IMG/VR virus record: IMGVR_UViG_3300020172_001601
Location: 62,001 to 126,000 of that record
Direction: 5' to 3' (one strand)
DNA length: 64,000 bases
Shown here: piece after piece, positions 8,493-62,122 of the stretch
How positions within the stretch are numbered: position 1 is the stretch's first letter
Layout of the letters: the number at the start of each line of letters is the position of its first letter
Made by a program: the position numbers and the translations under genes
Notes under the pieces: generated by a model
What the model saw: only the letters and a program-made list of their open reading frames with translations
Told to the model about the DNA's origin: nothing
Databases searched by the model: none

Positions 8493-8617
8493 GGACTGTT
8501 AGCTCAGTGGCCTGTTTACAGGGAAGCCGGTTGTATTAGCCGAGAAATCGGATGATACAAACACTTCAGAGCGTCGTAGCAATACGAAGGTCGATGGTTC
8601 GATTCCATCACGGTCCA
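8493..8617 (+). ncRNA. tRNA-like RNA, GCAA tetraloop instead of anticodon, D-loop insertion
   Basis: GGACTGT/ACGGTCC acceptor; TCGTA-GCAA-TACGA; GATGG-TTCGATT-CCATC. Confidence 0.75.
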
Positions 8618-8621
8618 CTAT

Positions 8622-8799
8622 GGGGAAGTAGTAGAATCCAACTCAGAGCAGTTGGAGTGGAAAAGCAGTTTAGGCTCACGGAGCAATCCGCATGTTGATG
8701 GGGAAACCCATAAACATGAACCAAGAGGGGCGACCCTCGAACAACTGCCGAGAATACCGGGGTAACTCGGTGATGCTGGTTCGAGTCCAGCCTTCCCCA
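8622..8799 (+). ncRNA. tRNA-like RNA, GTAA tetraloop, ~110-nt multi-hairpin D-loop insertion
   Basis: GGGGAAG/CTTCCCC; CCGGG-GTAA-CTCGG; GCTGG-TTCGAGT-CCAGC. Confidence 0.75.
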
Positions 8800-8915: not shown

Positions 8916-9047
8916 GCTGGGGTAGTAGAATTGGAATGTATGACTAGGAAGCGACATGAGGTTGTAATGACCTTTAATTCGCCCCCATGACCATACAGAG
9001 AACGCTACAGTAATGTGGAAATGCAGGTTCGAGTCCTGCCCCCGGCA
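8916..9047 (+). ncRNA. tRNA-like RNA, GTAA tetraloop, D-loop insertion
   Basis: GCTGGGG/CCCCGGC; CTACA-GTAA-TGTGG; GCAGG-TTCGAGT-CCTGC. Confidence 0.75.
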
Positions 9048-11245: not shown

Positions 11246-11287
11246 AAACCCCGCCCAGGCAAGAAAAGCCTGGGCGGGGTTTTTTTG
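11246..11287 (+). terminator. strong intrinsic terminator/attenuator before tRNA array
   Basis: ACCCCGCCCAGGC/GCCTGGGCGGGGT followed by a T run. Confidence 0.85.
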
Positions 11288-12945: not shown

Positions 12946-13192
12946 GAGAGTGTAGTGTGAATAGCCGCAGAGGTAAATTCACAAAAGTTGAAGGAAGTGC
13001 AAAGCTAAAACTGCAAGTAACAGTTGCAAAAGCTATAAAAACCGTGAGCGGCTGTAAGGGCCGACAGGCTTGGAGAAAATAACTTTGCATAGAGATCAAT
13101 GAGTAGTGTTTCGAGATAAGCGGTAGGCAGCACAGAGGCTATAGCATTTGCAACCGGAGCCTCCAGTTTAGGTTCGAGTCCTAACGCTCTCA
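12946..13192 (+). ncRNA. 247-nt tRNA-like RNA with very large D-loop insertion
   Basis: GAGAGTG/CGCTCTC acceptor; TTAGG-TTCGAGT-CCTAA; GAGGCT/AGCCTC stem with oversized loop. Confidence 0.65.
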
Positions 13193-13205: not shown

Positions 13206-13278
13206 GGTTCCGTGGTGTAGTGGTACTGCATACCTCCCTGTCACGGAGAAGGTACGAGTTCGATCCTCGTCGGAACCG
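13206..13278 (+). tRNA. tRNA-Asp(GTC)
   Basis: CTGTCAC loop. Confidence 0.9.
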
Positions 13279-13280
13279 CT

Positions 13281-13352
13281 GTGATTGAAGCCAAACGGTG
13301 CGGCGTCTCTTTGTGAAAGAGATAATAGTGGGTTCGACTCCCATCAATCACC
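13281..13352 (+). tRNA. tRNA-His(GTG)
   Basis: TCTCT-TTGTGAA-AGAGA. Confidence 0.85.
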
Positions 13353-13364
13353 TGTTAGTTTTTT

Positions 13365-13437
13365 GGGCGTGGAGTTCGGTTGGTAGAACATCCCCCTGTC
13401 ACGGGGAAGGCTGCGGGTTCAACTCCCGTCACGCTCG
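13365..13437 (+). tRNA. tRNA-Asp(GTC)
   Basis: TCCCC-CTGTCAC-GGGGA. Confidence 0.85.
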
Positions 13438-13597: not shown

Positions 13598-13661
13598 CTA
13601 TGTTCATCAGGTCCGCTAACTTGGTGAACAGAAAGGTTGCGGCGAGTTTAGCGGCTCGTTT

Positions 13662-13738
13662 GAGGTTGTGTTCGTCTAGTGGTCTAGGATGCCGTCGTTG
13701 AAGACGGCGACATGGGTTCAAATCCCATACACAATCTC
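13662..13738 (+). ncRNA. Glu-like tRNA body with 6-nt anticodon loop
   Basis: CCGTC-GTTGAA-GACGG; extended acceptor GAGGTTGTGT/ACACAATCTC. Confidence 0.65.
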
Positions 13739-13753
13739 GCAACTGAATTTTAT

Positions 13754-13832
13754 GGCCGTGGAAACGAAAGCTCCGTGGTGGGGCATCAGACTGCAAATCT
13801 GACGTTAAGAGGTTCGACTCCTCCTGCGGCCT
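13754..13832 (+). tRNA. tRNA-Cys(GCA) with insertion before D arm
   Basis: TCAGA-CTGCAAA-TCTGA; U73. Confidence 0.75.
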
Positions 13833-13835
13833 CTC

Positions 13836-13906
13836 GATTCGGGTTAGTGTAACGGTAGCACGGAGCCGTCAAAGGCTCCAGAGTGGTTCGACTCCACACC
13901 CTTATC
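13836..13906 (+). ncRNA. tRNA-like RNA, short anticodon loop (TAGTGTAACGGTAGCACG family)
   Basis: GGAGCC-GTCAAA-GGCTCC; T arm present. Confidence 0.6.
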
Positions 13907-13913
13907 ACAATAT

Positions 13914-13983
13914 GTTCTGTCCTGCGGATTCAGGCATTGAGTCTACGAAACTCGACTGGAAGGTTCGACTCCTTCACGGAACA
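13914..13983 (+). tRNA. tRNA-Arg(ACG), compact non-canonical fold
   Basis: TTGAGT-CTACGAA-ACTCGA. Confidence 0.75.
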
Positions 13984-13991
13984 CTTGATAT

Positions 13992-14062
13992 GCCCGGTTG
14001 ATGAAATGGTATCGTGTCTGCATTACAAGCAGAATTCGGGGGTTCGATTCCCTCACCGGGTA
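13992..14062 (+). tRNA. tRNA-Val(TAC)
   Basis: TCTGC-ATTACAA-GCAGA. Confidence 0.85.
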
Positions 14063-14075
14063 CTGGATTGAATAT

Positions 14076-14147
14076 GGCCCATTCGTCTACTGGCTAGGAC
14101 CGCTGTTTTTCAGGCAGCAGAAGACGGATCGAAACCGTCATGGGTCA
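14076..14147 (+). tRNA. tRNA-Glu(TTC)
   Basis: GCTGT-TTTTCAG-GCAGC. Confidence 0.85.
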
Positions 14148-14149
14148 CT

Positions 14150-14229
14150 TAGTTGTTGGATAAATTAGTGTAACGGTAGCACGCCTCTCACCAAGGGGAA
14201 GATTGGTTCGATTCCAATACCAACAACTA
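14150..14229 (+). ncRNA. tRNA-like RNA with 5-nt anticodon loop
   Basis: CCTCT-CACCA-AGGGG; terminal stem TAGTTGTTGG/CCAACAACTA. Confidence 0.7.
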
Positions 14230-14301
14230 AATGAGACAAATTAGTGTAACGGTAGCACGCTCCCGTGGAGGGAGAAGATTGGTTCAACTCCAATACTCAT
14301 T
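14230..14301 (+). ncRNA. tRNA-like RNA with 5-nt anticodon loop (paralog)
   Basis: CTCCC-GTGGA-GGGAG; same D and T arms as previous. Confidence 0.7.
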
Positions 14302-14304
14302 TAC

Positions 14305-14377: not shown

Positions 14378-14406
14378 CTGAAACATTTAACCTTTGGAGA
14401 AATACT

Positions 14407-15154
14407 ATGGTGCGTCTTTGGCTCGAAACTGTGCGGATTTAGACCAACAGGTAGGTTACACCTGGGGCATTACTTCTCGGTGATTCAACCGGGACAAGCT
14501 GGGTGTACCGTACTGGTGGCAAACTATCATGCACCGGAGGTAAAGAATCTGGAAGTATCCGTGAACGCCTTACGGCAATACGGTGTCCAGACCATAGTGA
14601 TTCAGAAGGACGTGTTTGACGCTGAGTTGTTCTTCCGACTATTGACGCTCGCTAAAATGGGCGACTTGAGCCGGATGACACAATTCAAGTCAACAGAAGA
14701 GGACGATAGGACTGGCCAATTGTTGACCTACCCTGTTCTCATGGCGCATGATGTTGCGGGTTACTCCGAAGTCATTGTGGGCCTGGATCAGAAGCAGCAT
14801 TTGGAATATGCCAGAAAGCTGTTGAGAAAATACAACAGTGTATATGGCACGACATATCCAATCCCGATAGCGAATATCGTGGTGGGACGTGTCAAAGATT
14901 TGCGTGACCCGACGAAGAAAATGTCGAAGTCATCACCACAAGGATGTTTATTCCTTGATGATAAGGTTGATGATATTCAACAAAAGATTCGGAAAGCGAC
15001 CGCAGATGAAGAGGGCCTGAATAACTTGAAGTTTTTGTATGGGGAGTTTGTAAGAGAAACGCCTCCAACAAGTAATCAAGAACTAAAAGAAAAGCTGGCC
15101 GATGGTTTGGTGAAATGCTTTGCAAGCTGTAGTGGCACAGCATCCGGCTCTTAA
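14407..15154 (+). CDS. trpS: tryptophanyl-tRNA synthetase (compact), requiring +1 frameshift at 14416-14421
   Basis: GFRPTGRLHLGHY, YPVLMAHD, VGLDQKQHLE, KMSKS; the SD-associated ATG (14407) is out of frame with the catalytic ORF. Confidence 0.85.
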
Positions 15155-17758: not shown

Positions 17759-17898
17759 GCGTCTTTAGTGTAACTGTTAGAGCCGACCGACCTGAAAGGC
17801 CACCGGGCAACCGAGTTCTTCAGGCACGACAAGCGATAACGGCTGAAGCACGTCGCCTCTGGAGGGCAAGAGACTAGGTGCGAATCCTAGAGGACGCT
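17759..17898 (+). ncRNA. tRNA-like RNA with ~65-nt D-loop insertion and abnormal anticodon arm
   Basis: GCGTCTT/AGGACGC; TAGTGTAAC...AGCACG; CTAGG-TGCGAAT-CCTAG. Confidence 0.65.
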
Positions 17899-19369: not shown

Positions 19370-19500
19370 TTGTGACAAATGCTCGTTTGGGATTACATTT
19401 GGTTCGACTCCAAGGGGCGGCTCTTTCAAAAACATGCCGCCCAACCAGCACAGGGCAACCTGGGGCTGGGGTCCGATCTCAGCACAATTTGTTGTCACAA
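19370..19500 (+). ncRNA. Y-RNA-like RNA with T-loop
   Basis: TTGTGACAAATGC...GGGATTACATT-TGGTTCGACTCCA...GCACAATTTGTTGTCACAA. Confidence 0.65.
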
Positions 19501-20240: not shown

Positions 20241-20313
20241 GACAGCGAAGCCAAACGGCTCGGCGACAGTTTCATAAGCTGTTCATTAGTGGGTTCGACT
20301 CCCACCGCTGTCA
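20241..20313 (+). tRNA. tRNA CAT (Met or Ile2)
   Basis: ACAGT-TTCATAA-GCTGT. Confidence 0.8.
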
Positions 20314-26624: not shown

Positions 26625-26693
26625 GTCTCGGCCTGCGGATCAGGCGTTGGGCCTCCGAAGCCCGAATGAAAGGTTCGACTCCTTTCCGGGATA
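26625..26693 (+). tRNA. tRNA-Arg(CCG), compact non-canonical fold
   Basis: TTGGGC-CTCCGAA-GCCCGA. Confidence 0.75.
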
Positions 26694-26696
26694 CTT

Positions 26697-26765
26697 GCCC
26701 CTGGTGATGGACACAGCAGATCGTTCTAAGGTCAGCGTTGAGGGTTCGATTCCTTCCGGGGGCGC
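26697..26765 (+). tRNA. tRNA-Arg(TCT), reduced D arm
   Basis: GATC-GTTCTAA-GGTC; T arm intact. Confidence 0.55.
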
Positions 26766-39018: not shown

Positions 39019-39121
39019 GGTCGGGTAACTCAGCGGCAGAGTCATCAGTGAATCCGGGTGGTTTTATAGTTGCCATTGCGGAAAGCTGATGAGGTCGCAG
39101 GTTCGAGTCCTGCCCCGGCCA
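39019..39121 (+). ncRNA. tRNA-like RNA with extended hairpin in anticodon arm
   Basis: GGTCGGG/CCCGGCC; CATCAGT..GCTGATG enclosing ~33-nt insert. Confidence 0.7.
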
Positions 39122-39528: not shown

Positions 39529-40437
39529 ATGAACATCACACGCATTGCTCCGTCGCCGACCGGCGATATGCACATTGGCACTGCCAGAACCGCATATTTC
39601 AACTGGCTCGCAGCACGGGCCAGCGGTGGTAAGTTCATTCTTCGGGTGGACGACACCGATCAGAAGCGAAACGATCCAGCCTATACAGAAGTCATTCTGT
39701 CCACAATGAAGTGGCTAGGTTTGGACTACGATGAGATCGTCTTCCAGAGTTCCAGATTCGACGTATACAAGGCCGCAGCGGGCTTGTTGATCCATGAAGG
39801 CTGGGCCGTTCCAAAAGATGGAGCCACGGTTTTTAACTTGAAGAAGGACCATGTTTTTCCTTCTCATTGGAAGGACGAAATCAAGGGCGACATCAAGATC
39901 AGCGATGATGACATATCCCATATGGATGGGATGGTTCTCATTAAGTCTGATGGGAGTCCATCTTATAACTTTTGTTCGATTGTTGATGATTTGCACATGG
40001 GGGTCAACCTAATCATCCGTGGAGTGGATCATATAACAAACACAGCAAAGCAGGTGATGCTTTGGGATGTCCTCAATAGCGGACAGACGATACCAAGGTT
40101 TGCCCACCTGGGTCTTATTTGCATTGATGGAAAGCCTATGTCCAAAAGAGACGGGGCATCGAGCATGTTGAATTACATGAACGCCGGATATGATTCCGAC
40201 GCCATGTTGAATTTTCTTGCACGCCTTGGTTGGGGGCCAACAAAGGACGACAAGTCCACAACCCTATTGCCGAGAGACAAGATGCTTGAAATGTTTCTAA
40301 CTTCGGGTAAGATGAGGAGTCAGCCAGCTAGTTTCGATTCTGGCAAATTGGAGTCGTTCGACCGCAAGTACAAGGCCCGTAAGGGGACTTGGCGAACGGG
40401 CGACAAGTTGATTTCTGACACTAACAAAGAGGCATAG
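39529..40437 (+). CDS. glutamyl-tRNA synthetase family protein lacking anticodon-binding domain
   Basis: RIAPSPTGDMHIG, LRVDDTD, IIRGVDH, KPMSKRDG; only 302 aa. Confidence 0.85.
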   Translation: MNITRIAPSPTGDMHIGTARTAYFNWLAARASGGKFILRVDDTDQKRNDPAYTEVILSTMKWLGLDYDEIVFQSSRFDVYKAAAGLLIHEGWAVPKDGATVFNLKKDHVFPSHWKDEIKGDIKISDDDISHMDGMVLIKSDGSPSYNFCSIVDDLHMGVNLIIRGVDHITNTAKQVMLWDVLNSGQTIPRFAHLGLICIDGKPMSKRDGASSMLNYMNAGYDSDAMLNFLARLGWGPTKDDKSTTLLPRDKMLEMFLTSGKMRSQPASFDSGKLESFDRKYKARKGTWRTGDKLISDTNKEA

Positions 40438-42034: not shown

Positions 42035-42370
42035 CATGCCAAGGGCGTCTTGGATTCATCGTGTTGATGCCCGCCGATTTCATTCGGCGGCAAGAATGAT
42101 GGAAGACGATTTGGAAGGTGCCTACTTGACCTGTAGGGAAAAGTACGGTGCAGAAGTGGCTGGAGTAGTGTTGGTCACAATACTCCGACAAAAATTGAAC
42201 AACAATCAAGACCAATGGCCTCCACCGGAAGACCTTATTCGCAAGGTGAACAACTTTCTCGTGGAACACGGCTTAATGATTGATTGAATTTGTTGACTGG
42301 ATGTGGGGTGCGAACCTCACCATGACATAGTGTGTCTGGTCAAATAACTCGAAAGGCAATGGTGATTACG

Positions 42371-44077
42371 ATGGCTAACAAGAATCTATTCAAGTCTGAG
42401 CGTGGCTCAATTGTTCCAGCAACGGACGTTCTCAACGAAGCTGGTGGTGTTGCATACAAGATGAGTGCAAAGCAGGCCCTTGCGCAGTACGTCTGCACTG
42501 GCTGCTTGAACGGCACCTACTACACGTCTGCCAAGACGCAACTGGACACTGTTCGTCAGTTGCTTACTGAAGTCGAGCCTGAGTTCCTTGGTCAGTTGGC
42601 TGTGTACTCGCACGAAAAGTCCTTCATGAAGGACTTGCCTGCTCTGTTGGTCGCATTCCTCGCATCCGACAAGGGTGCTGGTGGTGGTCCAACTACGGCT
42701 ACGCAGGAGCGAAAGCTGAAGACGCTCCGTAAGGTTTTCCATCGTGTCATCGACAGCGGCAACATGCTGCGCAACTTTGTGCAGATGATCCGTTCGGCAG
42801 CATTCGGTCGCAAGTCATTCGGTGAAGTGCCTCGCAAGCTGATTCGTGACTGGTTCGAGAATAAGTCTCCGGCTGGTATTTTCTTCCAGAGCATTGGCAA
42901 TAGCCCATCCCTGGCAGATATTATCAAGCTGACCAAGCCGAAGCCGAACACGCCTGAAAAGGCGGCTGTATTGGCGTATCTGCTTGGTGCAGAAACCGTT
43001 GACGGCGAAGATGGCAAGTTGCTTGTTCGCAAGTATCTTGACCGTGCCGACAAGCAGGTGAAGGTTGCGTACTCGCAGCCTTACGACAACCTGCCGGAAA
43101 TCATTCGTGAATACGAAGCGTGGAAGAAGGACAAGAGCCTCCCGGTTCCTGCCATCAACTTCCGCTTCCTGGACAACGAGAAGCTGTCAACTGCTCAGTG
43201 GGCAGATATTGCTTCCAAGGCAAACTGGCTTACGACCCTGAAGAACCTCAACGCATATGCCGACCACGGCGTATTCGGCGTTGAAGGCATGACTGACATG
43301 ATCGCCGCACGTCTCAGCAATGCTGATGAAGTGCGTAAGGTTCGGGTATTCCCATACCAGATCATGATGGCCTACCTCGCAACCGATACGGAAGCGAAAG
43401 TACCGCCCAAGGTCCGTAACGCCATTCAGGATGCTATGGAAGTGGCATGTGAAAACGTACCAGCGTTGGGAAAGGTTAAGTTCTTCCCGGACGTGTCTGG
43501 TTCGATGAGGAGCGCTGCTATTACGGGCGACCGTGGTTCGGCGACTTCTAAGGTTCGGTGTGTTGACGTGGCTGCTCTGTTCGCAGTGGCAATGCTTCGT
43601 CGCAACCCGGAAGCGGAAGTAATTCCGTTCGAGCAGACGGTTCGTGAACTTACACTGAACCCTCGTGACAGCATCATGACCAACGCTACTCGCCTCGCAG
43701 CGATTGGCGGTGGTGGAACCAACTGTTCGGCCCCACTTGCTTTGCTCAACGCAAAGAAGGATTGGTCGGCAGACGTGTTGGTGTATATTTCGGACTATGA
43801 GTCCTGGGTGGATAGCACTGGCTACCACGCTGGTAATGGCAACGGTACAGCACTGCTCAATGAGTGGGTGAAGTACAAGAGCCATAACAAGAATGCCAAG
43901 CTGATTTGCATCGACTTGACCCCTCGTGCAAACCATCAGGTCAAGGAACGTGATGATATTCTCCAGGTCGGTGGATTCTCGGACAACGTATTCAACGTGA
44001 TCGCAAGGTTCGTTGAAGGCGGCTGGTCGAAGGATTTTTGGGTCAAGGAGATTGAAAGCGTTCAACTGGATACTTAA
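42371..44077 (+). CDS. rsr: Ro60/TROVE domain RNA-binding protein with vWA domain
   Basis: NEAGGVAY, TGCLNGTYY, LKNL, VFPYQ, MIDAS DVSGSM, GGGTNCSAPL, ISDYESW. Confidence 0.9.
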   Translation: MANKNLFKSERGSIVPATDVLNEAGGVAYKMSAKQALAQYVCTGCLNGTYYTSAKTQLDTVRQLLTEVEPEFLGQLAVYSHEKSFMKDLPALLVAFLASDKGAGGGPTTATQERKLKTLRKVFHRVIDSGNMLRNFVQMIRSAAFGRKSFGEVPRKLIRDWFENKSPAGIFFQSIGNSPSLADIIKLTKPKPNTPEKAAVLAYLLGAETVDGEDGKLLVRKYLDRADKQVKVAYSQPYDNLPEIIREYEAWKKDKSLPVPAINFRFLDNEKLSTAQWADIASKANWLTTLKNLNAYADHGVFGVEGMTDMIAARLSNADEVRKVRVFPYQIMMAYLATDTEAKVPPKVRNAIQDAMEVACENVPALGKVKFFPDVSGSMRSAAITGDRGSATSKVRCVDVAALFAVAMLRRNPEAEVIPFEQTVRELTLNPRDSIMTNATRLAAIGGGGTNCSAPLALLNAKKDWSADVLVYISDYESWVDSTGYHAGNGNGTALLNEWVKYKSHNKNAKLICIDLTPRANHQVKERDDILQVGGFSDNVFNVIARFVEGGWSKDFWVKEIESVQLDT

Positions 44078-44132: not shown

Positions 44133-44255
44133 TTGGCGGTAGCTCAATGGTAGAGCAAAAGTAAAAACAAATCTAAGCGATATTTGGGCTTCGGCCATGC
44201 AGTTTGGATTACATTATCCAACTTTAGGTTGTGTGTTCGATTCACACCCCGCCAG
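44133..44255 (+). ncRNA. tRNA/Y-RNA chimera directly downstream of Ro60
   Basis: D arm TAGCTCAATGGTAGAGC, T arm GTGTG-TTCGATT-CACAC, insert GCGATATTTGGGC-TTCG-GCCATGC..GGATTACATT as in 17999. Confidence 0.75.
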
Positions 44256-46671: not shown

Positions 46672-49233
46672 ATGGGTTCGTTCAAAGATACGCTGCAACT
46701 CCCGAAAACCGATATGCCCATCGCTGCCAACTTACCGGCCAGCGAACCCGCCGTTTACGCATCCTGGGGCAACGTCTATTCCCGCTTGAAGCGAGACGGG
46801 AAGAACCCTTTCATTCTTCATGATGGCCCGCCGTATGCTAACGGCGATATTCATATCGGCCATGCTCTCAATAAAATCCTCAAAGACTTCGTTGTGAAGT
46901 TCCAATACTTCAACGGGCGAGCCGTCGAGTTTGTCCCCGGCTGGGACTGTCACGGACTTCCGATTGAATCGAAGGTTTATTCCATCATCCGAGTTGGCGG
47001 CGGCAATCCCAGCAAAGAGCCGTTGGAATTAGTCCAACGCATGTGTCGGAAATATGCCGGTGAGCAAATTGCTAAACAAAAAGAGCAATTTCAAACCCTG
47101 GGCGTAATCGCCGATTGGGAAAACCACTACGAGACGATGAGTCCGTGGTTTGAAAACATGATCTCTCAGCGACTTGCTGAATTGCGGGATCATGGATATT
47201 TGGTTCGCCGCAAGAAGCCTGTCTATTGGTCTTGGTCTTATGGCACTGCACTGGCTGAGGCAGAAGTCGAATATCGTGACCGAGTAGATAATTCGGTGTA
47301 TGTCGTATTCAAAACTGATAAGTTCCCTTGGGGGCTTTTGGTTTGGACCACAACGCCGTGGACACTTCCGGCCAACGTCGCCGTGGCATTGAACCCCAAG
47401 ATGAAATATCTTGCTGTTCGTGTGCGAGATTACAATCTCCCCGTGCTAGTAGCTGCCGATCTTGTCAAGACCTTGACAGATAAAGGAATCATTGAGCATG
47501 TCTTTGACCTTTATAGTGCGCAAGGCGACGAGTTCAATGGTTGGCAATTTCAACATCCTGTTTATCCCGACCAAACCGTGCCGTGCGTAATGGCCGACTT
47601 TGTGTCCGCTGATAGCGGCACTGGTTGTGTACATATCGCCCCTGGTCATGGAGAAGAAGACTATCGAGTAGGGTTGGCGAATAATCTTCCGGTCGTCATG
47701 CCTGTTGACGGAACGGGCAGATACACCGAGGGCAAATACGAAGGTCAATGGATTTTTGATGAAACTGACGGTTCGTATAAAGAATACAACTCGAATCCCA
47801 ATATCCTTGCTGATTTAAGGGAGCGTGGTCTATTGGTTCATACTGAGAAGATCACTCACAGCTATCCCTATTGCAGCCGATCTGGAACGCCGGTCATCTT
47901 CCGTGCTACTGAACAGTGGTTCTTGGACTTGGACAAGATTCGCAATCTGATCTTGGGGCCGATGACTGCTATTGAGAATGTGCAGTTCTATCCAGAGCAT
48001 TCCAAGAACCGTATGGTTCCGATGCTGGAGAACCGCCCTGACTGGTGCATCAGTCGCCAGCGAGTATGGGGCGTGCCGATCTTTGAAGGACCGGACATTC
48101 TTGACGTATGGTTTGATTCAGGATTGACGTGGAACATCCTGGGAGATCGTCAGGCTGACGTTTATCTGGAAGGCAACGATCAGCACCGTGGATGGTTCCA
48201 GAGCAGCCTATGGCTGTCTGTGGCCCTTCAGGGCGTTGCGCCATACAAGAAGGTCATCACGCATGGCTTTGTTGTCGATCAAGACGGCAAAAAGATGGCT
48301 AAGTCCAAGGGCAATGTCGTGTCGCCATTGGAAGTGACTCAAAAGCAGGGAGCAGAAGTGCTTCGCTATTGGGTTGCGAGCATTGACTATACGAAGGATG
48401 CGCAGTGCAGCCCGGAGATCATGAAGCGTGCTGCCGAGGGCCACAAGAAACTTCGTAATACTTTCAGATTCCTAGTGGCAAATATGCCCAAGGAATCTCC
48501 GTATAAGAACGACCAGAATATGGTTTTCCTGCCGGTCAATCGTTGGATTTACGAAAAGACTCAGAAGGTCTTTTCTGAAGTCCATCAGTTGTTTGCCGAC
48601 AACCTGTTCCATGCTGGTCTGCAAAAGTTGACGGAGTATATCAATACTGATTTGAGCGGTATTTACATGAACGCCGTCAAAGACTGCTTGTATTGTGATG
48701 CTGTCGATAGTGTGTCCCGAAAGAATGTTGTTCACGTCATGAGTAAAATCCTCAAGGCGATGATGACGCTTGTGGCTCCGTTGTTTACCTACACGGCGCA
48801 GGAAGTGTTCAATTATTGTCCTGAATGGGTGAAGGGTGACGCCAAGGATATTTTCGATCTTCAATACGAAGCATTGCCAGACTTGCCGCCACACTTGGCT
48901 CGGATGGACGAAGCGTATTGGAAAGAGGCGTTGTCCGCATTCCATACTGAGTTCGACAAGATCAAGACCGCAGGCAAGGCTCGTGATACTTTGGAAGTCG
49001 TTATTGAATCGACTTCTGGTGATACGTTCTTTGTCGGGGCTGAAGATTGGTTTGTCGTAAGTCATTGGGCATCACATCCTTCAACCTGTGAGGCCCTGGG
49101 GGAATTCTCGGTGGGCGACAAGGTTTATCGGATTGTCAAGAGTCAGAAGAATAAGTGCGAACGATGCTGGAAACGCAATGCAGAACAGGAGTTATGTCCT
49201 CGCTGTCTCGGTGTGGTGAATCCGCAGGTTTGA
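46672..49233 (+). CDS. ileS: isoleucyl-tRNA synthetase
   Basis: HDGPPYANGDIHIGH, WTTTPWTLP, DWCISRQR, KMAKS, C-terminal CERC Zn finger. Confidence 0.97.
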   Translation: MGSFKDTLQLPKTDMPIAANLPASEPAVYASWGNVYSRLKRDGKNPFILHDGPPYANGDIHIGHALNKILKDFVVKFQYFNGRAVEFVPGWDCHGLPIESKVYSIIRVGGGNPSKEPLELVQRMCRKYAGEQIAKQKEQFQTLGVIADWENHYETMSPWFENMISQRLAELRDHGYLVRRKKPVYWSWSYGTALAEAEVEYRDRVDNSVYVVFKTDKFPWGLLVWTTTPWTLPANVAVALNPKMKYLAVRVRDYNLPVLVAADLVKTLTDKGIIEHVFDLYSAQGDEFNGWQFQHPVYPDQTVPCVMADFVSADSGTGCVHIAPGHGEEDYRVGLANNLPVVMPVDGTGRYTEGKYEGQWIFDETDGSYKEYNSNPNILADLRERGLLVHTEKITHSYPYCSRSGTPVIFRATEQWFLDLDKIRNLILGPMTAIENVQFYPEHSKNRMVPMLENRPDWCISRQRVWGVPIFEGPDILDVWFDSGLTWNILGDRQADVYLEGNDQHRGWFQSSLWLSVALQGVAPYKKVITHGFVVDQDGKKMAKSKGNVVSPLEVTQKQGAEVLRYWVASIDYTKDAQCSPEIMKRAAEGHKKLRNTFRFLVANMPKESPYKNDQNMVFLPVNRWIYEKTQKVFSEVHQLFADNLFHAGLQKLTEYINTDLSGIYMNAVKDCLYCDAVDSVSRKNVVHVMSKILKAMMTLVAPLFTYTAQEVFNYCPEWVKGDAKDIFDLQYEALPDLPPHLARMDEAYWKEALSAFHTEFDKIKTAGKARDTLEVVIESTSGDTFFVGAEDWFVVSHWASHPSTCEALGEFSVGDKVYRIVKSQKNKCERCWKRNAEQELCPRCLGVVNPQV

Positions 49234-59146: not shown

Positions 59147-60796
59147 ATGAACGAATTCCATATTTCGGAAAAAGACAACAACACCACGTTCGTCACAACG
59201 GCGATTGATTATCCGAACGCTCTGCCACATATCGGCACAGCATTCGAGAAGATCGGCGCTGACGTATACGCCCGGTTCCGTCGTTTCCAGGGTCGTGATG
59301 TATATTTCACGATGGGCAACGACGAGAACACTGTGAAGGTTCTCAAAGCAGCAAAAGCCGTAGACAAGCATCCTCAGCCATATGTCGATGAAATGGCCGA
59401 TGCGTTTAAGGCTGTGTGGAAAGAACTCAACATTTCCTTTGACGACTTCATTCAGACCAGTGAAGATCGACACCTGTTGGGTGTTCAGAGATTCCTGCGT
59501 GCTGTGAATTCCGCTGGTTATATTGAGAAGCGACCATACAAGGCTTTGTATTGTGAGGGCTGTGAAGAGTTCAAGAGTCCAAATAGCTTGGACTATGCAA
59601 AGCGATGCCCGAACCATACTGGCACACCTTTGGTGGAACGGGAGGAAGAGAATTACTTCTTTCTTCTGTCTGCATTCAAGCAGCGTGTGGCTGATTTGAT
59701 TTATCCCACTCCATTCCTCACTGCCTTCCTGAGTATTGAGCCTGAGTCTCGCTACAACGAAGTCACTAAGTTCATCGACACGGAACTGACGGATATTTCC
59801 ATCAGTCGCCGTAATGAAGGCTGGGGCATTCCAATTCCGTGGGACGACACCCAAGCCACCTATGTCTGGTTCGACGCTTTGTTGAACTATTTGACTGTGA
59901 TTGGTTTTGGGAACGATTGGGAGAAATTCCAAAAGTATTGGCCTGCTGAAGTTCACTTCATTGGCAAGGACATTACTCGGTTCCACTGTGCATTGTTCCC
60001 GGCAATGTGCATGGCCTATAACGAAGGATGTGATAAGCTGGGTGAGCCTCAATACAAGTTGAAGGCTTTTCCTCAGCGTGTATTTGCACACGGCTTCGTC
60101 AATCAAAAGAAGGGAAGTCAGGTTGTCAAGATTTCCAAGAGCGGAGATTCAATCCGACCTGGAGAACTGATTGAGCAGTTCGGGTCGGATGCGTACAGAT
60201 ACTATTTCTTGTCGAAGTTCAACTACGATACGGACGGTGAATATAGCCTGGACCACTTTAGAGAAGTGTATAACGCCGACCTCGCCAACTCCTTGGGCAA
60301 CCTTGTGAGTCGCACCGTAGGAATGTCGTTGCAGTATTTCGACGGGAAGATTCCACCGATGGTCGCAGAAGGCCAGCCTTGGCTTGATGAGAAGACGGCG
60401 TTGGAATACGAGCAATTTATTGTTGATTGTTGTTCGTATCGGCACGCTATTGAATGGACGTGGAAGATCATCTTCAACGCCAACAAGTTGATCGAGAATT
60501 CAAAGCCGTGGGAATTGGTTAAGTTGCCCGGCAACACCTGTGGTCAGGTGTTGGGCCAACTTGTGGGCAGTCTGAGAATCATCAGTCTGTTGATCCGACC
60601 GTTCACGCCAGCGGTGGCCGAGAAGATTTACACGACGTTTCAGTGGGCTGAAGGATGGAATGAAGTTGATTGGGAGTTCGTTAAGAAGTTGGCGACGAAC
60701 AACTTCCTGGGACTCGAAAACGGTATTGCCATCAACAGGAATGTTTTAGATAATGCTGGAAAGTTTCCGGTGCTTTTTCCGAGAGTCAAATCATGA
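59147..60796 (+). CDS. metG: methionyl-tRNA synthetase
   Basis: TTAIDYPNALPHIG, ISISR..WGIP, YVWFDAL, IGKDI, KISKS, LANSLGNL. Confidence 0.96.
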   Translation: MNEFHISEKDNNTTFVTTAIDYPNALPHIGTAFEKIGADVYARFRRFQGRDVYFTMGNDENTVKVLKAAKAVDKHPQPYVDEMADAFKAVWKELNISFDDFIQTSEDRHLLGVQRFLRAVNSAGYIEKRPYKALYCEGCEEFKSPNSLDYAKRCPNHTGTPLVEREEENYFFLLSAFKQRVADLIYPTPFLTAFLSIEPESRYNEVTKFIDTELTDISISRRNEGWGIPIPWDDTQATYVWFDALLNYLTVIGFGNDWEKFQKYWPAEVHFIGKDITRFHCALFPAMCMAYNEGCDKLGEPQYKLKAFPQRVFAHGFVNQKKGSQVVKISKSGDSIRPGELIEQFGSDAYRYYFLSKFNYDTDGEYSLDHFREVYNADLANSLGNLVSRTVGMSLQYFDGKIPPMVAEGQPWLDEKTALEYEQFIVDCCSYRHAIEWTWKIIFNANKLIENSKPWELVKLPGNTCGQVLGQLVGSLRIISLLIRPFTPAVAEKIYTTFQWAEGWNEVDWEFVKKLATNNFLGLENGIAINRNVLDNAGKFPVLFPRVKS

Positions 60797-60995: not shown

Positions 60996-61760
60996 ATGAG
61001 AATCGCATCCGAATTCCACGACTACTACGATGTAGGCATGGCTGAGGGCCAGGATCAATCCTTGGTCTATCAGCGATACCCTATCGTAGAGGAACGGGAG
61101 CATTACCCGTTCGGTTCAATGTATTCAGGCTACAGCCTGAATGCTCGATCTCTTTACGTCCGCTCATATACCATTGGGTTCTGTGGCAAAATGTACAAGG
61201 TATTGGAACTCAATACCTTGGAGAACGGTTCACGCAACGACAAGGAAGGTCGATCTACTCGTAAGTGGGCATACAACCTGCGGGATGTTGACACTTACAT
61301 CCGTCACCATTATCCTAAGCAATACGCTGACTATTTAGAAAAGAATTGGCGGCGTGGCAATGGCTGGTCTGGCGAACAGCGTCAGCACGCCTTTGATTCA
61401 TTCTTCAATGGTCGTAATCAGTGGGATCGCAAGCCTACCGAAGAGGAATTGAACAAGAATGAAGAGTGGCGTCGAAGCTGGTTCGAGAAGCATCGCAGTC
61501 CTATATTCGTAGCTGAGTATTCTACTGTCGCCAACAAATACGGCGGTAGGATCACATATAACGCCCAACTGAAGCCATTTGAGTTTTATCGGGTGTTCGA
61601 TCCTTATCAGGCTTATCAGGAAGTCGCCATGTGGCTTTCTAATCAAGCTGTTCCGATCAAGCCGATTCCAGAGCTTGATGATGTGACAATGGCTGAGAGC
61701 AAAGGTTTCAATAAGTTTAGTTTTAGAAAAGACCCCAGCAGCAAAAAGCGAAAGCACTAG
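60996..61760 (+). CDS. phage hypothetical protein
   Basis: FHDYYD..IGFCGK..DPYQAYQEV. Confidence 0.65.
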   Translation: MRIASEFHDYYDVGMAEGQDQSLVYQRYPIVEEREHYPFGSMYSGYSLNARSLYVRSYTIGFCGKMYKVLELNTLENGSRNDKEGRSTRKWAYNLRDVDTYIRHHYPKQYADYLEKNWRRGNGWSGEQRQHAFDSFFNGRNQWDRKPTEEELNKNEEWRRSWFEKHRSPIFVAEYSTVANKYGGRITYNAQLKPFEFYRVFDPYQAYQEVAMWLSNQAVPIKPIPELDDVTMAESKGFNKFSFRKDPSSKKRKH

Positions 61761-61836
61761 GGGTTGAACGGTGAGTCCAATCGGTAAGGCGCAAGTCGCT
61801 CCGATGTAACTGAGGGTTCGATTCCCTCCAACTCCA
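61760..61836 (+). ncRNA. Ala-type tRNA-like domain without D stem or anticodon (mini tmRNA-like)
   Basis: GGGGTTG/CAACTCC-A (G3:U70), GAGGG-TTCGATT-CCCTC, ATCGG/CCGAT stem capped by GCAA hairpin. Confidence 0.65.
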
Positions 61837-62122
61837 CTATGAATGAAAAACCAGCAGATGGCGTCCGAGGCTTTTTTCTTTACAGTCCGTTTTCGCATCG
61901 GCACTTCTTCCGTGTTTACGGAGAAGTCGATCCGACGACGGGCCATAAGACGTTCACTGATTACAAGGTGTGCGCCGAAGATATAGAAGTCACTATTGAA
62001 GCAAATGGGTTGTCCCTGTATGAAGGGGATGAAGATAAAAACCGTCTCGATTGGTCCAGTCGTGTCTTAGGAAGAGATGGCAAAGACCACCTGGATGTGC
62101 GAACACCAAAAAAGGAACAGTA

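What the first reader, a model, noticed from the sequence alone, without database searches (positions are those of the whole stretch)
13662..14301. Second tRNA-mimic family with 5-6-nt anticodon loops
Seen: 13836, 14150 and 14230 share the D arm TAGTGTAACGGTAGCACG and have loops GTCAAA, CACCA and GTGGA. The latter two have a bulged A(T/C)AAAT insert and extended acceptor. 17759 has the same D-stem ends around an insertion, and 13662 has a 6-nt loop on a Glu-like body. Inference: non-decoding mimics or frameshift-promoting tRNAs.
Basis: partly seen in the sequence, partly recalled or inferred. Interest (0 to 1): 0.6.

Follow-up and report, generated by a model that had tools for sequence, protein, structure and literature searches.

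The report
Anticodon-less tRNA mimics in phage operon
A huge freshwater phage carries, inside its roughly 50-gene tRNA operon, several conserved tRNA-shaped genes whose "anticodon" loops are too short and too changeable to read codons, so they are most likely non-decoding tRNA mimics rather than broken tRNAs or frameshift-promoting tRNAs.

Summary
Three elements (13836, 14149, 14229) share an exact 18-nt D arm (0 expected by chance) and fold as cloverleaves with 5-6-nt "anticodon" loops. 13664 has a 6-nt loop on an Asp/Glu-type body. 17759 carries a 71-nt D-loop insertion.

The window lies in a 340-kb huge-phage record, inside one long tRNA operon. The short loops are not recent decay. Five related lineages (TrpRS identity down to 76%) carry tRNA-like genes at the same place with 4-8-nt loops. 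Loop length and sequence change in every lineage. The closing and "anticodon" helices covary. The A-rich connector plus D arm is almost invariant. The mimics are more conserved (79-88%) than the flanking true tRNA-Glu and tRNA-Thr (63-89%).

Best reading: functional, non-decoding tRNA-shaped RNAs cut out of the operon and recognised through the connector, D arm and elbow. The partner is unknown. The phage's own Ro60 is one candidate: it is deleted in the only lineage where the pair collapsed.

No support was found for frameshift-promoting tRNAs. Independently, the TrpRS gene 100 nt downstream appears to need a conserved +1 frameshift at CUU_UGG.

The parts
13664..13738 (+). tRNA-like gene on an Asp/Glu-type body: 8-bp acceptor, 6-bp 'anticodon' stem, 6-nt loop GUUGAA, 3-nt variable loop
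   Evidence: ARAGORN tRNA-???. Fold z -5.5. Orthologs in L007, L128, L145 and L164 have loops of 6, 6, 7 and 5 nt. 8 of 23 pairs are compensatory.
13836..13908 (+). D-arm-family member 1: exact 18-nt D arm, 6-bp stem with 6-nt loop GUCAAA, closing helix with 2 mismatches
   Evidence: Orthologs in L128 (loop UUAAAU) and L145 (7-bp stem, loop GUUGG). Precisely absent in L007 and L164.
14149..14229 (+). D-arm-family member 2 (tandem copy 1): 10-11-bp closing helix, connector AUAAAU+UA, exact D arm, 5-bp stem with loop CACCA, canonical T arm
   Evidence: The closing helix is perfect but different in L145 and L164, so the changes are compensatory.
14229..14302 (+). D-arm-family member 3 (tandem copy 2): 7-bp closing helix, connector ACAAAU+UA, exact D arm, 5-bp stem with loop GUGGA, T loop UUCAACU
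   Evidence: Stem change U-A to C-G in L128 and in run X3. Loops are CACCA, CGCAA and UCGCAU in L128, L145 and L164.
17759..17898 (+). tRNA-like gene with the same D-stem ends split by an insertion of about 71 nt in the D loop; 7-nt loop UCUGGAG on an imperfect stem
   Evidence: The ortholog in L008 is 92% identical with the insertion kept, a perfect 5-bp stem and a 6-nt loop UGCGAA.
13754..13832 (+). Context and internal control: tRNA-Cys(GCA)-like gene with a 9-nt connector and a 5-bp D hairpin (loop GUGGU) but a normal 7-nt anticodon loop
   Evidence: The anticodon loop CUGCAAA is unchanged in L007, L128, L145 and L164.
42332..44077 (+). Context: phage Ro60/TROVE + vWA gene, candidate protein partner of tRNA mimics
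   Evidence: Pfam PF25045 and PF05731. Full-length homologs sit on contigs whose lengths match those of L128, L145, L163 and L164. Most of the gene is deleted in the L007 contig.

Best explanation
These are functional, non-decoding tRNA-shaped RNAs. They are transcribed with the surrounding tRNAs as one long precursor. Because they keep a closing helix stacked on a canonical T arm and a D loop with the GG that forms the tRNA elbow, they are probably cut out by the tRNA-processing enzymes (inferred). Their 'anticodon arm' is only a short structural hairpin whose loop is free to change, so they cannot act as adaptors on the ribosome. What selection preserves is the A-rich connector plus the 18-nt D arm (sequence) and the two helices (pairing). 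That points to sequence-specific recognition of the upper half of the molecule by a tRNA-binding partner (inferred). The partner is not identified. The leading candidate is the phage's own Ro60/Rsr protein, whose known bacterial and phage partners (Y RNAs) are tRNA mimics. An alternative candidate is the compact TrpRS encoded just downstream.
For: Shown: all elements lie head-to-tail on the + strand among 49 tRNA genes, with 0-4 nt spacers. A strong terminator sits at 11246-11282 and no other terminator-like site outside tRNA genes follows on the + strand up to 16 kb. Cloverleaf folds are MFE and centroid structures. tRNA-like genes with a Trp-type D arm and non-7-nt loops occupy the same place in the window, L128, L145, L164 and L163; that place is upstream of tRNA-Thr(TGT) and of TrpRS. 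The loops are CACCA/GUGGA, GUGGA/CACCA, UGCA/CGCAA, UUCAA/UCGCAU, and an 8-nt loop in L163. TrpRS identity falls to 76-77% in L163 and L164. Covariation on 9 family members: 88% of cells paired against 74% in shuffles (0 of 500 shuffles as high). The covariation score is 0.284 against 0.112 (0 of 500) and at most 0.12 when partners are slid. The closing and 'anticodon' helices each have 5 pairs changed on both sides. Copy 1's 10-11-bp helix is perfect with different sequences in the window, L145 and L164. The mimics are 79-88% identical between lineages. The flanking tRNA-Glu is 68-100% identical and tRNA-Thr 63-67%. The D arm is 17-18 of 18 identical in the tandem-pair copies of L128, L145 and L164 and in the single L163 copy; the 13836 orthologs differ at 2-3 positions. 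For the 13664 family, 8 of 23 pairs are compensatory. Control: true decoders keep their loops. Cys stays CUGCAAA, and Glu and Thr keep 7-nt loops with the anticodon unchanged in every lineage. Ro60 lead: the gene is in the window. Full-length homologs are listed on contigs of the same lengths as those of L128, L145, L163 and L164. In the L007 contig window 42027-43785 is deleted, and there 13836 is gone and the pair is fused into one copy that cannot form a closing helix (z -0.44). Published Y RNAs mimic tRNA D and T arms with near-invariant arm sequences. D. radiodurans Yrn1 has a 5-bp 'anticodon' stem with a 6-nt loop (PMC4201824).
Against: No expression or processing data exist. The only RNA run covers 13275-13423, not the mimics. 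Some copies carry stem defects: L128 copy 1 has one acceptor and one T-stem mismatch, both L145 copies have weakened T stems, and the window's 13836 has 2 acceptor mismatches. 13836 is dispensable in L007 and L164, although a full-length Ro60 is listed on a contig of L164's length. Arms are swapped between the two tandem copies in different lineages. Gene conversion could therefore inflate both the apparent conservation and the covariation. The Ro60 link rests on a single loss lineage, which also lost a redundant canonical tRNA-Asp by the same T-arm recombination. The elements lie 28 kb from Ro60, lack the YrlA motif, and a better-placed tRNA-like candidate sits right after Ro60 (44133-44255).
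Confidence: 0.55

Rival explanations
1. They are tRNA pseudogenes or recombination debris. Duplicated tRNA pieces would arise by D-arm and T-arm recombination and homing-endonuclease traffic in the array. They would be kept similar by gene conversion, have no function of their own, and be lost slowly.
For: HNH ORFs sit inside the arrays of relatives. T-arm-to-T-arm deletions are seen in L007, both in the pair and in tRNA-Asp no. 3. Arms are swapped between copies. Stem defects occur in some lineages. In other phages the same D arm occurs in poorly folding tRNA fragments with 4-6-nt loops, with z between -0.5 and +0.7.
Against: The mimics are more conserved than the flanking true tRNAs across lineages whose TrpRS is only 76-91% identical. 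Compensatory changes occur in a 10-11-bp helix that no tRNA donor could supply. The connector plus D arm is near-invariant and is not identical to any canonical tRNA D arm in the genome.
Confidence: 0.25
2. They are cis-acting processing or stability elements of the operon. In this reading they are tRNA-shaped 'punctuation' that directs RNase P/Z cuts or protects neighbouring tRNAs or the TrpRS mRNA, with no role as free RNAs.
For: They have zero-length spacers to their neighbours. The position is fixed between tRNA-Glu/Pro and tRNA-Thr, upstream of TrpRS, in five lineages. Only the top half of the molecule is conserved.
Against: Canonical tRNAs on both sides already supply processing sites. 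The sequence invariance of the connector and D arm is more than RNase P/Z recognition needs. 13664 and 13836 lie far from any ORF.
Confidence: 0.1
3. They are unconventional decoders: doublet- or quadruplet-reading, frameshift-promoting tRNAs.
For: tRNAs with non-standard loop sizes are known, and one phage case is cited in the recoding review, though without demonstrated frameshifting (PMC5009743). A +1 frameshift site lies 100 nt downstream. The L163 homolog has an 8-nt loop.
Against: Loop length (4, 5, 6, 7 or 8 nt) and sequence differ in every lineage, and no triplet, doublet or quadruplet is conserved. Most lack U33. The arms are 12-16 nt instead of 17. No window loop is complementary to CUUU, the quadruplet that would give the TrpRS shift. 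The frameshift site resembles the self-sufficient CUU_U type.
Confidence: 0.05

Closest known systems
Bacterial and phage Y RNAs (YrlA, Yrn1), partners of Ro60/Rsr (Chen et al. 2014, PMC4201824)
   Same: They are non-decoding tRNA mimics with D and T arms able to form the elbow. Arm sequences are near-invariant beyond structural need. Yrn1 has a 5-bp 'anticodon' stem with a 6-nt loop and no variable arm. Genomes with them encode Ro60, and this phage does too. M. smegmatis YrlA is cut by RNase P and receives CCA.
   Different: YrlA is circularly permuted (T arm, acceptor stem-loop, D arm) and carries a GNCGAAN0-1G motif, and it lies within about 4 kb of Ro60. The elements here keep the tRNA order, lack the motif and lie 28 kb upstream inside the tRNA operon. 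No Y-RNA family appeared among the Rfam matches for 9-64 kb.
tRNA pseudogenes and tRNA-like fragments in phage tRNA arrays
   Same: Same genomic setting. Some other phages have Trp-type D arms followed by 4-6-nt loop hairpins. ARAGORN flags about 1% of array genes as having non-3-nt anticodons.
   Different: Those fragments fold no better than shuffled sequence. The elements here fold well, covary and are conserved more than their true-tRNA neighbours.
Frameshift-suppressor tRNAs with altered anticodon-loop size (sufD-type 8-nt loops; doublet decoding in mutant tRNAs)
   Same: They have non-7-nt anticodon loops on a tRNA body.
   Different: Suppressors keep U33, a defined extended anticodon and a normal body. 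Here the loops are mostly shorter than 7 nt, unconserved and often lack U33, and two members have an altered acceptor-to-D connector.
Stable RNAs C and D of the phage T4 tRNA cluster (recalled from memory, not checked here)
   Same: They are small non-tRNA stable RNAs encoded and processed within a phage tRNA operon, with unknown function.
   Different: No sequence or structural comparison was made here.

Membership tests
Canonical decoding tRNA | 7-nt anticodon loop with U33 and purine 37 on a 5-bp stem (17-nt arm) | tested here: not met
   Loops are 5-6 nt in the window and 4-8 nt in relatives. Arms are 12-16 nt. CACCA has no U.
Canonical decoding tRNA | Anticodon conserved among orthologs | tested here: not met
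   Loop sequence differs in every lineage. Cys, Glu and Thr controls keep their anticodons.
Canonical decoding tRNA | 7-bp acceptor, 2-nt connector to the D stem, T stem abutting the acceptor | tested here: not met
   14149 and 14229 have an 8-nt connector and one extra nt after the T stem. Copy 1's helix is 10-11 bp. 13664 has 8 bp.
Canonical decoding tRNA | D loop with GG and T loop UUCRANY able to form the elbow | tested here: met
   The D loop is AACGGUA. The T loops are UUCGAUU, UUCAACU and UUCGACU on G-C-closed stems.
Canonical decoding tRNA | Score at or above the gathering threshold of Rfam RF00005 | tested here: not met
   No RF00005 hit at E<=1 for 13836, 14150 or 14230. 13664 hits only tRNA-Sec, at 31.9 bits against a threshold of 47.
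YrlA/Y RNA (Ro60 partner) | A Ro60/TROVE gene in the same genome | tested here: met
   Gene at 42332-44077, matching PF25045 and PF05731.
YrlA/Y RNA (Ro60 partner) | Encoded within about 4 kb of Ro60 on the same strand | tested here: not met
   Same strand, but 28 kb upstream.
YrlA/Y RNA (Ro60 partner) | GNCGAAN0-1G motif near the 5' end | tested here: not met
   Absent from all four elements. A near-match (AACGAAAG) in the connector of the Cys-like gene at 13754 is not conserved in L145 or L164.
YrlA/Y RNA (Ro60 partner) | Order T arm, acceptor stem-loop, D arm | tested here: not met
   The elements keep the normal tRNA order.
YrlA/Y RNA (Ro60 partner) | Physical binding to Ro60 | not testable with these tools
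   There is only a co-occurrence pattern. Ro60 is in the window, full-length homologs are listed on contigs matching the four other mimic-bearing relatives in length, and the gene is deleted in the lineage with the collapsed pair.
+1 frameshift-suppressor tRNA | 8-nt loop with an extended anticodon matching a quadruplet at a shift site | tested here: not met
   Window loops are 5-6 nt and none is complementary to CUUU at 14416-14419. Only L163 has an 8-nt loop.
tRNA pseudogene | Evolves without constraint (faster than functional neighbours, stems decay) | tested here: not met
   79-88% identity against 63-89% for flanking tRNAs in the diverged lineages. Covariation exceeds the shuffled and slid controls.

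The most novel reading that the evidence does not exclude
The elements are a new class of phage-encoded, tRNA-ordered Y-RNA-like mimics. They would be excised from a tRNA operon and work with the phage's own Ro60, or with another tRNA-binding factor such as the adjacent compact TrpRS. Possible roles are tRNA quality control and decoying host tRNA-targeting defences. The invariant connector plus D arm would be the recognition module, and the hypervariable 'anticodon' hairpin would be a spacer or an arms-race surface.
Probability: 0.2. Interest if true: 0.75.

Novelty: new variant of a known kind. Interest (0 to 1): 0.55.

Why it matters
Phage tRNA arrays are usually read as codon supplements or as replacements for tRNAs destroyed by host defences. 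These arrays also carry conserved tRNA-shaped genes that cannot decode, and those genes are kept more strictly than the real tRNAs beside them. Huge phages therefore seem to use the tRNA fold for something other than translation. That would be a tractable new set of tRNA mimics with a plausible protein partner (Ro60) encoded in the same genome. In practice, tRNA finders miss or mislabel these genes, so tRNA counts and code inferences for huge phages need care. The neighbouring TrpRS gene adds a second point of interest. It has an apparently conserved +1 frameshift at CUU_UGG, which would make TrpRS synthesis respond to charged tRNA-Trp the way RF2 synthesis responds to RF2.

Tried and rejected
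1. I considered a loop-loop 'kissing' between CACCA (holding CCA) and GUGGA (holding UGG), or Trp anticodon/codon mimicry linked to TrpRS. This was rejected because L145 and L164 have UGCA/CGCAA and UUCAA/UCGCAU instead.

2. I considered a Ro60-binding motif in the connector of the Cys-like gene at 13754 (AACGAAAG). It is not conserved in L145 or L164.

3. I tested quadruplet or doublet complementarity between the loops and the TrpRS shift site. None fits the required CUUU. CAAA in the 13836 loop matches UUUG, but in the wrong frame.

4. A T-arm pattern scan of IMG/VR found only unrelated tRNA-Ile and tRNA-Cys genes. A body-pattern scan for 13664 found only ordinary tRNA-Asp and tRNA-Glu genes. 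IMG/VR holds one close relative, L007.

5. tRNA-likes in other phages with the same D arm (L034, L042, L045, L078, L088) fold no better than shuffles. I did not count them as family members.

6. On expression: the one metatranscriptome run holds only 13275-13423, and as contigs, so it says nothing about the mimics.

7. The record behind L128 is not held for whole-record searches. No DNA could be fetched for TrpRS homologs P0029 and P0073.

8. Phage GenBank collection: only single-tRNA matches, no relative.

I re-ran it with coordinates only.

10. Complex prediction, structure prediction and the large representative protein search were not used. They would not bear on an RNA question.

Full report
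**Setting.** The window is bases 62001-126000 of a 340-kb IMG/VR virus record with an estimated 69% completeness, so it belongs to a huge phage. ARAGORN finds 49 tRNA genes between 10.8 and 39.2 kb, all on the + strand. A scan for T arms finds at least 18 more tRNA-like elements that ARAGORN does not call. A strong intrinsic terminator lies at 11246-11282, and no other terminator-like site outside tRNA genes follows on the + strand up to 16 kb. No ORF of 80 aa or more lies on either strand between 13100 and 14480. The finding therefore sits inside a long polycistronic tRNA operon that also carries a TrpRS gene (14408-15154; Pfam PF00579).

**Observation.**
- The 18-nt D arm occurs exactly three times, at 13845, 14166 and 14242. 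None is expected by chance, and the nearest relative is the D arm of tRNA-Trp(CCA) with two mismatches.
- Each element folds into the described cloverleaf as both the minimum-energy and the centroid structure.
- 13838-13908 has a 6-bp stem and a 6-nt loop.
- 14150-14229 and 14229-14300 each have a 5-bp stem and a 5-nt loop, 8 unpaired nucleotides between the closing helix and the D stem, a 3-nt variable loop, and one extra nucleotide after the T stem.
- 13662-13739 has an 8-bp acceptor, a 6-bp stem and a 6-nt loop, and folds very well (z -5.5).
- The closing helix of the first tandem copy is 10-11 bp. It begins directly after tRNA-Glu and shares one base with the second copy.
- 17759 has the D-stem halves separated by about 71 nt.
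- Rfam's tRNA model does not report the three D-arm elements at all.
- The interval also holds a tRNA-Cys(GCA)-like gene with a 9-nt connector (13754-13832) and an ordinary tRNA-Arg(ACG) (13913-13985) that the detectors missed.

**Relatives.** IMG/VR holds one close relative (L007/L008, a 78.6-kb contig). A metagenome pattern scan added L128, from a 462.6-kb contig. Through TrpRS homologs I reached three more lineages:

| Locus | Contig length | TrpRS identity |
|---|---|---|
| L145 | 602.7 kb | 91% |
| L164 | 48.5 kb | 77% |
| L163 | 56.0 kb | 76% |

Public runs from 17 studies of lakes and sediments hold the region. Contigs laid on the window add a further haplotype.

**The tandem pair in relatives.** In every lineage the place upstream of tRNA-Thr(TGT) and of TrpRS carries tRNA-like genes with the Trp-type D arm and a non-standard loop.

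| Lineage | Loop(s) at this place | Note |
|---|---|---|
| Window | CACCA, GUGGA | two copies |
| L128 | GUGGA, CACCA | arms swapped between the copies |
| Run X3 | window order | L128-type stem in copy 2 |
| L145 | UGCA, CGCAA | two copies |
| L164 | UUCAA, UCGCAU | two copies |
| L163 | 8-nt loop | single copy, normal 7-bp acceptor, no long connector |
| L007 | GUGGA (single arm) | one chimera of the two copies; cannot form a closing helix (z -0.44) |

Loop length and sequence are clearly unconstrained. That excludes a defined anticodon. It also rules out my own idea of a CCA/UGG loop-loop pair.

**Constraint on the scaffold.** The scaffold, unlike the loops, is constrained.
- The 10-11-bp closing helix of copy 1 is perfect in the window, L145 and L164 with different sequences.
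- The 'anticodon' stems pair in every variant.
- On an alignment of nine members, 88% of cells are paired against 74% in shuffles (0 of 500 as high).
- Ten pairs show changes on both sides. The covariation score is 0.284, against 0.112 in shuffles and at most 0.12 when partners are slid.
- The connector (consensus AYAAAU) and the 18-nt D arm are almost invariant.
- Overall the two copies are 79-88% identical between lineages. The flanking tRNA-Glu falls to 68% and tRNA-Thr to 63-67%.
- An unconstrained relic should not be more conserved than working tRNAs beside it.

There are caveats. Arms have been exchanged between the two copies, so gene conversion contributes to the similarity. Some copies carry one or two stem mismatches: L128 copy 1, both L145 T stems, and the window's 13836 acceptor.

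**13664.** The body is of the Asp/Glu type. Orthologs in L007, L128, L145 and L164 keep a well-paired cloverleaf, with 8 of 23 pairs compensatory. Their loops are GUUGAA, GUUUGA, UGUUAAU and UUCAA. The single 7-nt version has G at position 33. This element belongs to the same class (conserved scaffold, free loop) but to a separate lineage.

**13836.** It is present in L128 and L145, with different but paired closing helices and 5-6-nt loops. It is precisely absent in L007 and L164.

**17759.** Its ortholog in L008 keeps the insertion, is 92% identical, and has a perfect stem with a 6-nt loop.

**Controls.** The odd-looking Cys gene keeps CUGCAAA in every lineage. Glu, Thr, Val and Arg keep 7-nt loops and their anticodons.

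**What they are.** They are tRNA-derived, conserved and non-decoding. Three things are shown: their position in the operon, their fold, and their pattern of conservation. Two things are inferred. First, they are excised like tRNAs, because they keep a T arm stacked on a closing helix and an elbow-forming D loop. Second, they act through sequence-specific recognition of the connector, D arm and elbow.

**Candidate partner.** The window encodes a Ro60/TROVE protein (42332-44077). Bacterial and phage Ro60 proteins bind Y RNAs that mimic tRNA D and T arms, with near-invariant arm sequences. D. radiodurans Yrn1 has a 5-bp 'anticodon' stem with a 6-nt loop (PMC4201824).

Full-length Ro60 homologs are listed on contigs of the same lengths as those of L128, L145, L163 and L164. 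In the L007 contig window 42027-43785 is deleted, leaving only the last 96 codons. That is the one lineage where 13836 is gone and the pair has collapsed.

This is a lead, not proof. It is a single loss lineage, and that lineage also lost a redundant tRNA-Asp by the same kind of recombination. The elements fail three defining YrlA features: the motif, the permuted order, and closeness to Ro60. A tRNA-like RNA sits immediately after Ro60 (44133-44255).

**Frameshift idea.** I found nothing that links the mimics to frameshifting. However, the TrpRS gene downstream seems to need a +1 frameshift.
- A Shine-Dalgarno sequence and an ATG (14407) open a short frame, M-V-R-L-W..., which stops at 14440.
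- The TrpRS frame, with its HIGH motif, is +1 to this and has no start codon.
- In seven lineages (59-100% protein identity) the pattern is SD, ATG, one to three codons, then CTT TGG.
- The zero-frame stop lies at different places in different lineages.
- In L147, L148 and L163 the TrpRS frame is closed by a stop 0-2 codons before the overlap.
- Changes downstream of the site are synonymous in the TrpRS frame.
- CUU_U is the most efficient +1 shift site known in bacteria, the one in the RF2 gene (PMC5009743).
- Here the codon that follows is UGG. The shift could therefore rise when charged tRNA-Trp is scarce, giving an RF2-like feedback for TrpRS. That step is inferred.

**Comparison and novelty.** The closest known things are Y RNAs (same logic, different architecture and location) and tRNA pseudogenes (same setting, but these elements are under constraint). 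ARAGORN flags about 1% of genes in 1.35 Mb of fetched phage arrays as having non-3-nt anticodons, and nearly half of those belong to the 13664 family. I rate the finding a new variant of a known kind (tRNA mimics) and of moderate interest. The function and the partner are untested.

Noticed in passing
window 14390-14445 (ATG 14407, CTT 14416, TGG 14419, zero-frame TAG 14440); TrpRS frame 14408-15154: The TrpRS gene appears to need a +1 ribosomal frameshift at CUU_UGG. An SD and ATG open a 5-11-codon frame ending in L-W. The HIGH-motif frame is +1 and has no start codon. The pattern is conserved in 7 lineages, with the zero-frame stop at varying places and stops closing the TrpRS frame just upstream. 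It could be an RF2-like feedback that senses charged tRNA-Trp. No prior report turned up in one literature search.
   Followed up: partly
window 42332-44077 and 44133-44255: A phage Ro60/TROVE+vWA gene is followed by a terminator-like hairpin. Then comes a 123-nt tRNA-like RNA with a normal acceptor, D arm and T arm but a long insert in place of the anticodon arm. This is a candidate phage Y RNA. The Ro60 gene is almost wholly deleted in the related contig G001 (L007).
   Followed up: partly
window 13754-13832: A tRNA-Cys(GCA)-like gene has a 9-nt acceptor-to-D connector and a 5-bp D hairpin with loop GUGGU. It is conserved with an unchanged anticodon loop in L007, L128, L145 (two copies, GCA and ACA) and L164. 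It is probably the phage's working tRNA-Cys despite its odd shape. ARAGORN misses it, and Rfam's tRNA model gives only a sub-threshold partial match there (26.1 bits against a threshold of 29).
   Followed up: partly
window 13913-13985: An ordinary-looking tRNA-Arg(ACG) is missed by ARAGORN and Rfam in the window. ARAGORN calls its ortholog in L007.
   Followed up: partly
window 8493-8616, 8622-8798, 8916-9046, 12946-13191, 19398, 20241-20313, 20368, 26625-26763, 39019-39121: Many further tRNA-like genes with good acceptor and T arms lie outside ARAGORN's calls. Several have large insertions of 50-170 nt. The motif GGATTACAT recurs in three of them (near 19398, 20368 and 44231). The 246-nt element at 12946-13191 is conserved in L007 and L128.
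   Followed up: no
window 61760-61839: An 80-nt element matches only the tRNA-like domain of tmRNA (Rfam 33 bits, below threshold). It has a G3.U70 pair, the alanine identity mark, but no detected mRNA-like part. It may be a two-piece or minimal tmRNA.
   Followed up: no
G000 about 182011-182084 and 182708-182778 (outside the window): Two tRNA genes with anticodon CUA (amber suppressors; ARAGORN labels them 'Pyl') hint at TAG recoding in part of the genome. L145 has a gene that ARAGORN calls tRNA-Stop(UUA) at the position of 13664.
   Followed up: no
L007 800-1290 and 2400-2960; L145 4110-4814 and 5330-5854; L164 1880-2119: Free-standing HNH-type endonuclease ORFs sit between tRNA genes in relatives but not in the window. 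The arrays are mosaic, with near-identical blocks beside blocks only 63-67% identical. Genes are lost by T-arm-to-T-arm recombination; for example, the third tRNA-Asp is missing in L007.
   Followed up: partly
window 13599-13661: The spacer before 13664 is conserved and forms a 12-bp hairpin (z -2.5). A C-G to U-A compensatory change is seen in L128. It may be a processing signal or another small RNA.
   Followed up: no
window 39529-40437, 46672-49233, 59147-60796, 14408-15154: Four aminoacyl-tRNA-synthetase-like genes lie in one window: a Glu/GlnRS catalytic domain only, an Ile/Val/Leu-type enzyme, MetRS, and a compact TrpRS of about 245 aa. The compact TrpRS belongs to a large family found on contigs up to 673 kb long, several over 500 kb.
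   Followed up: no
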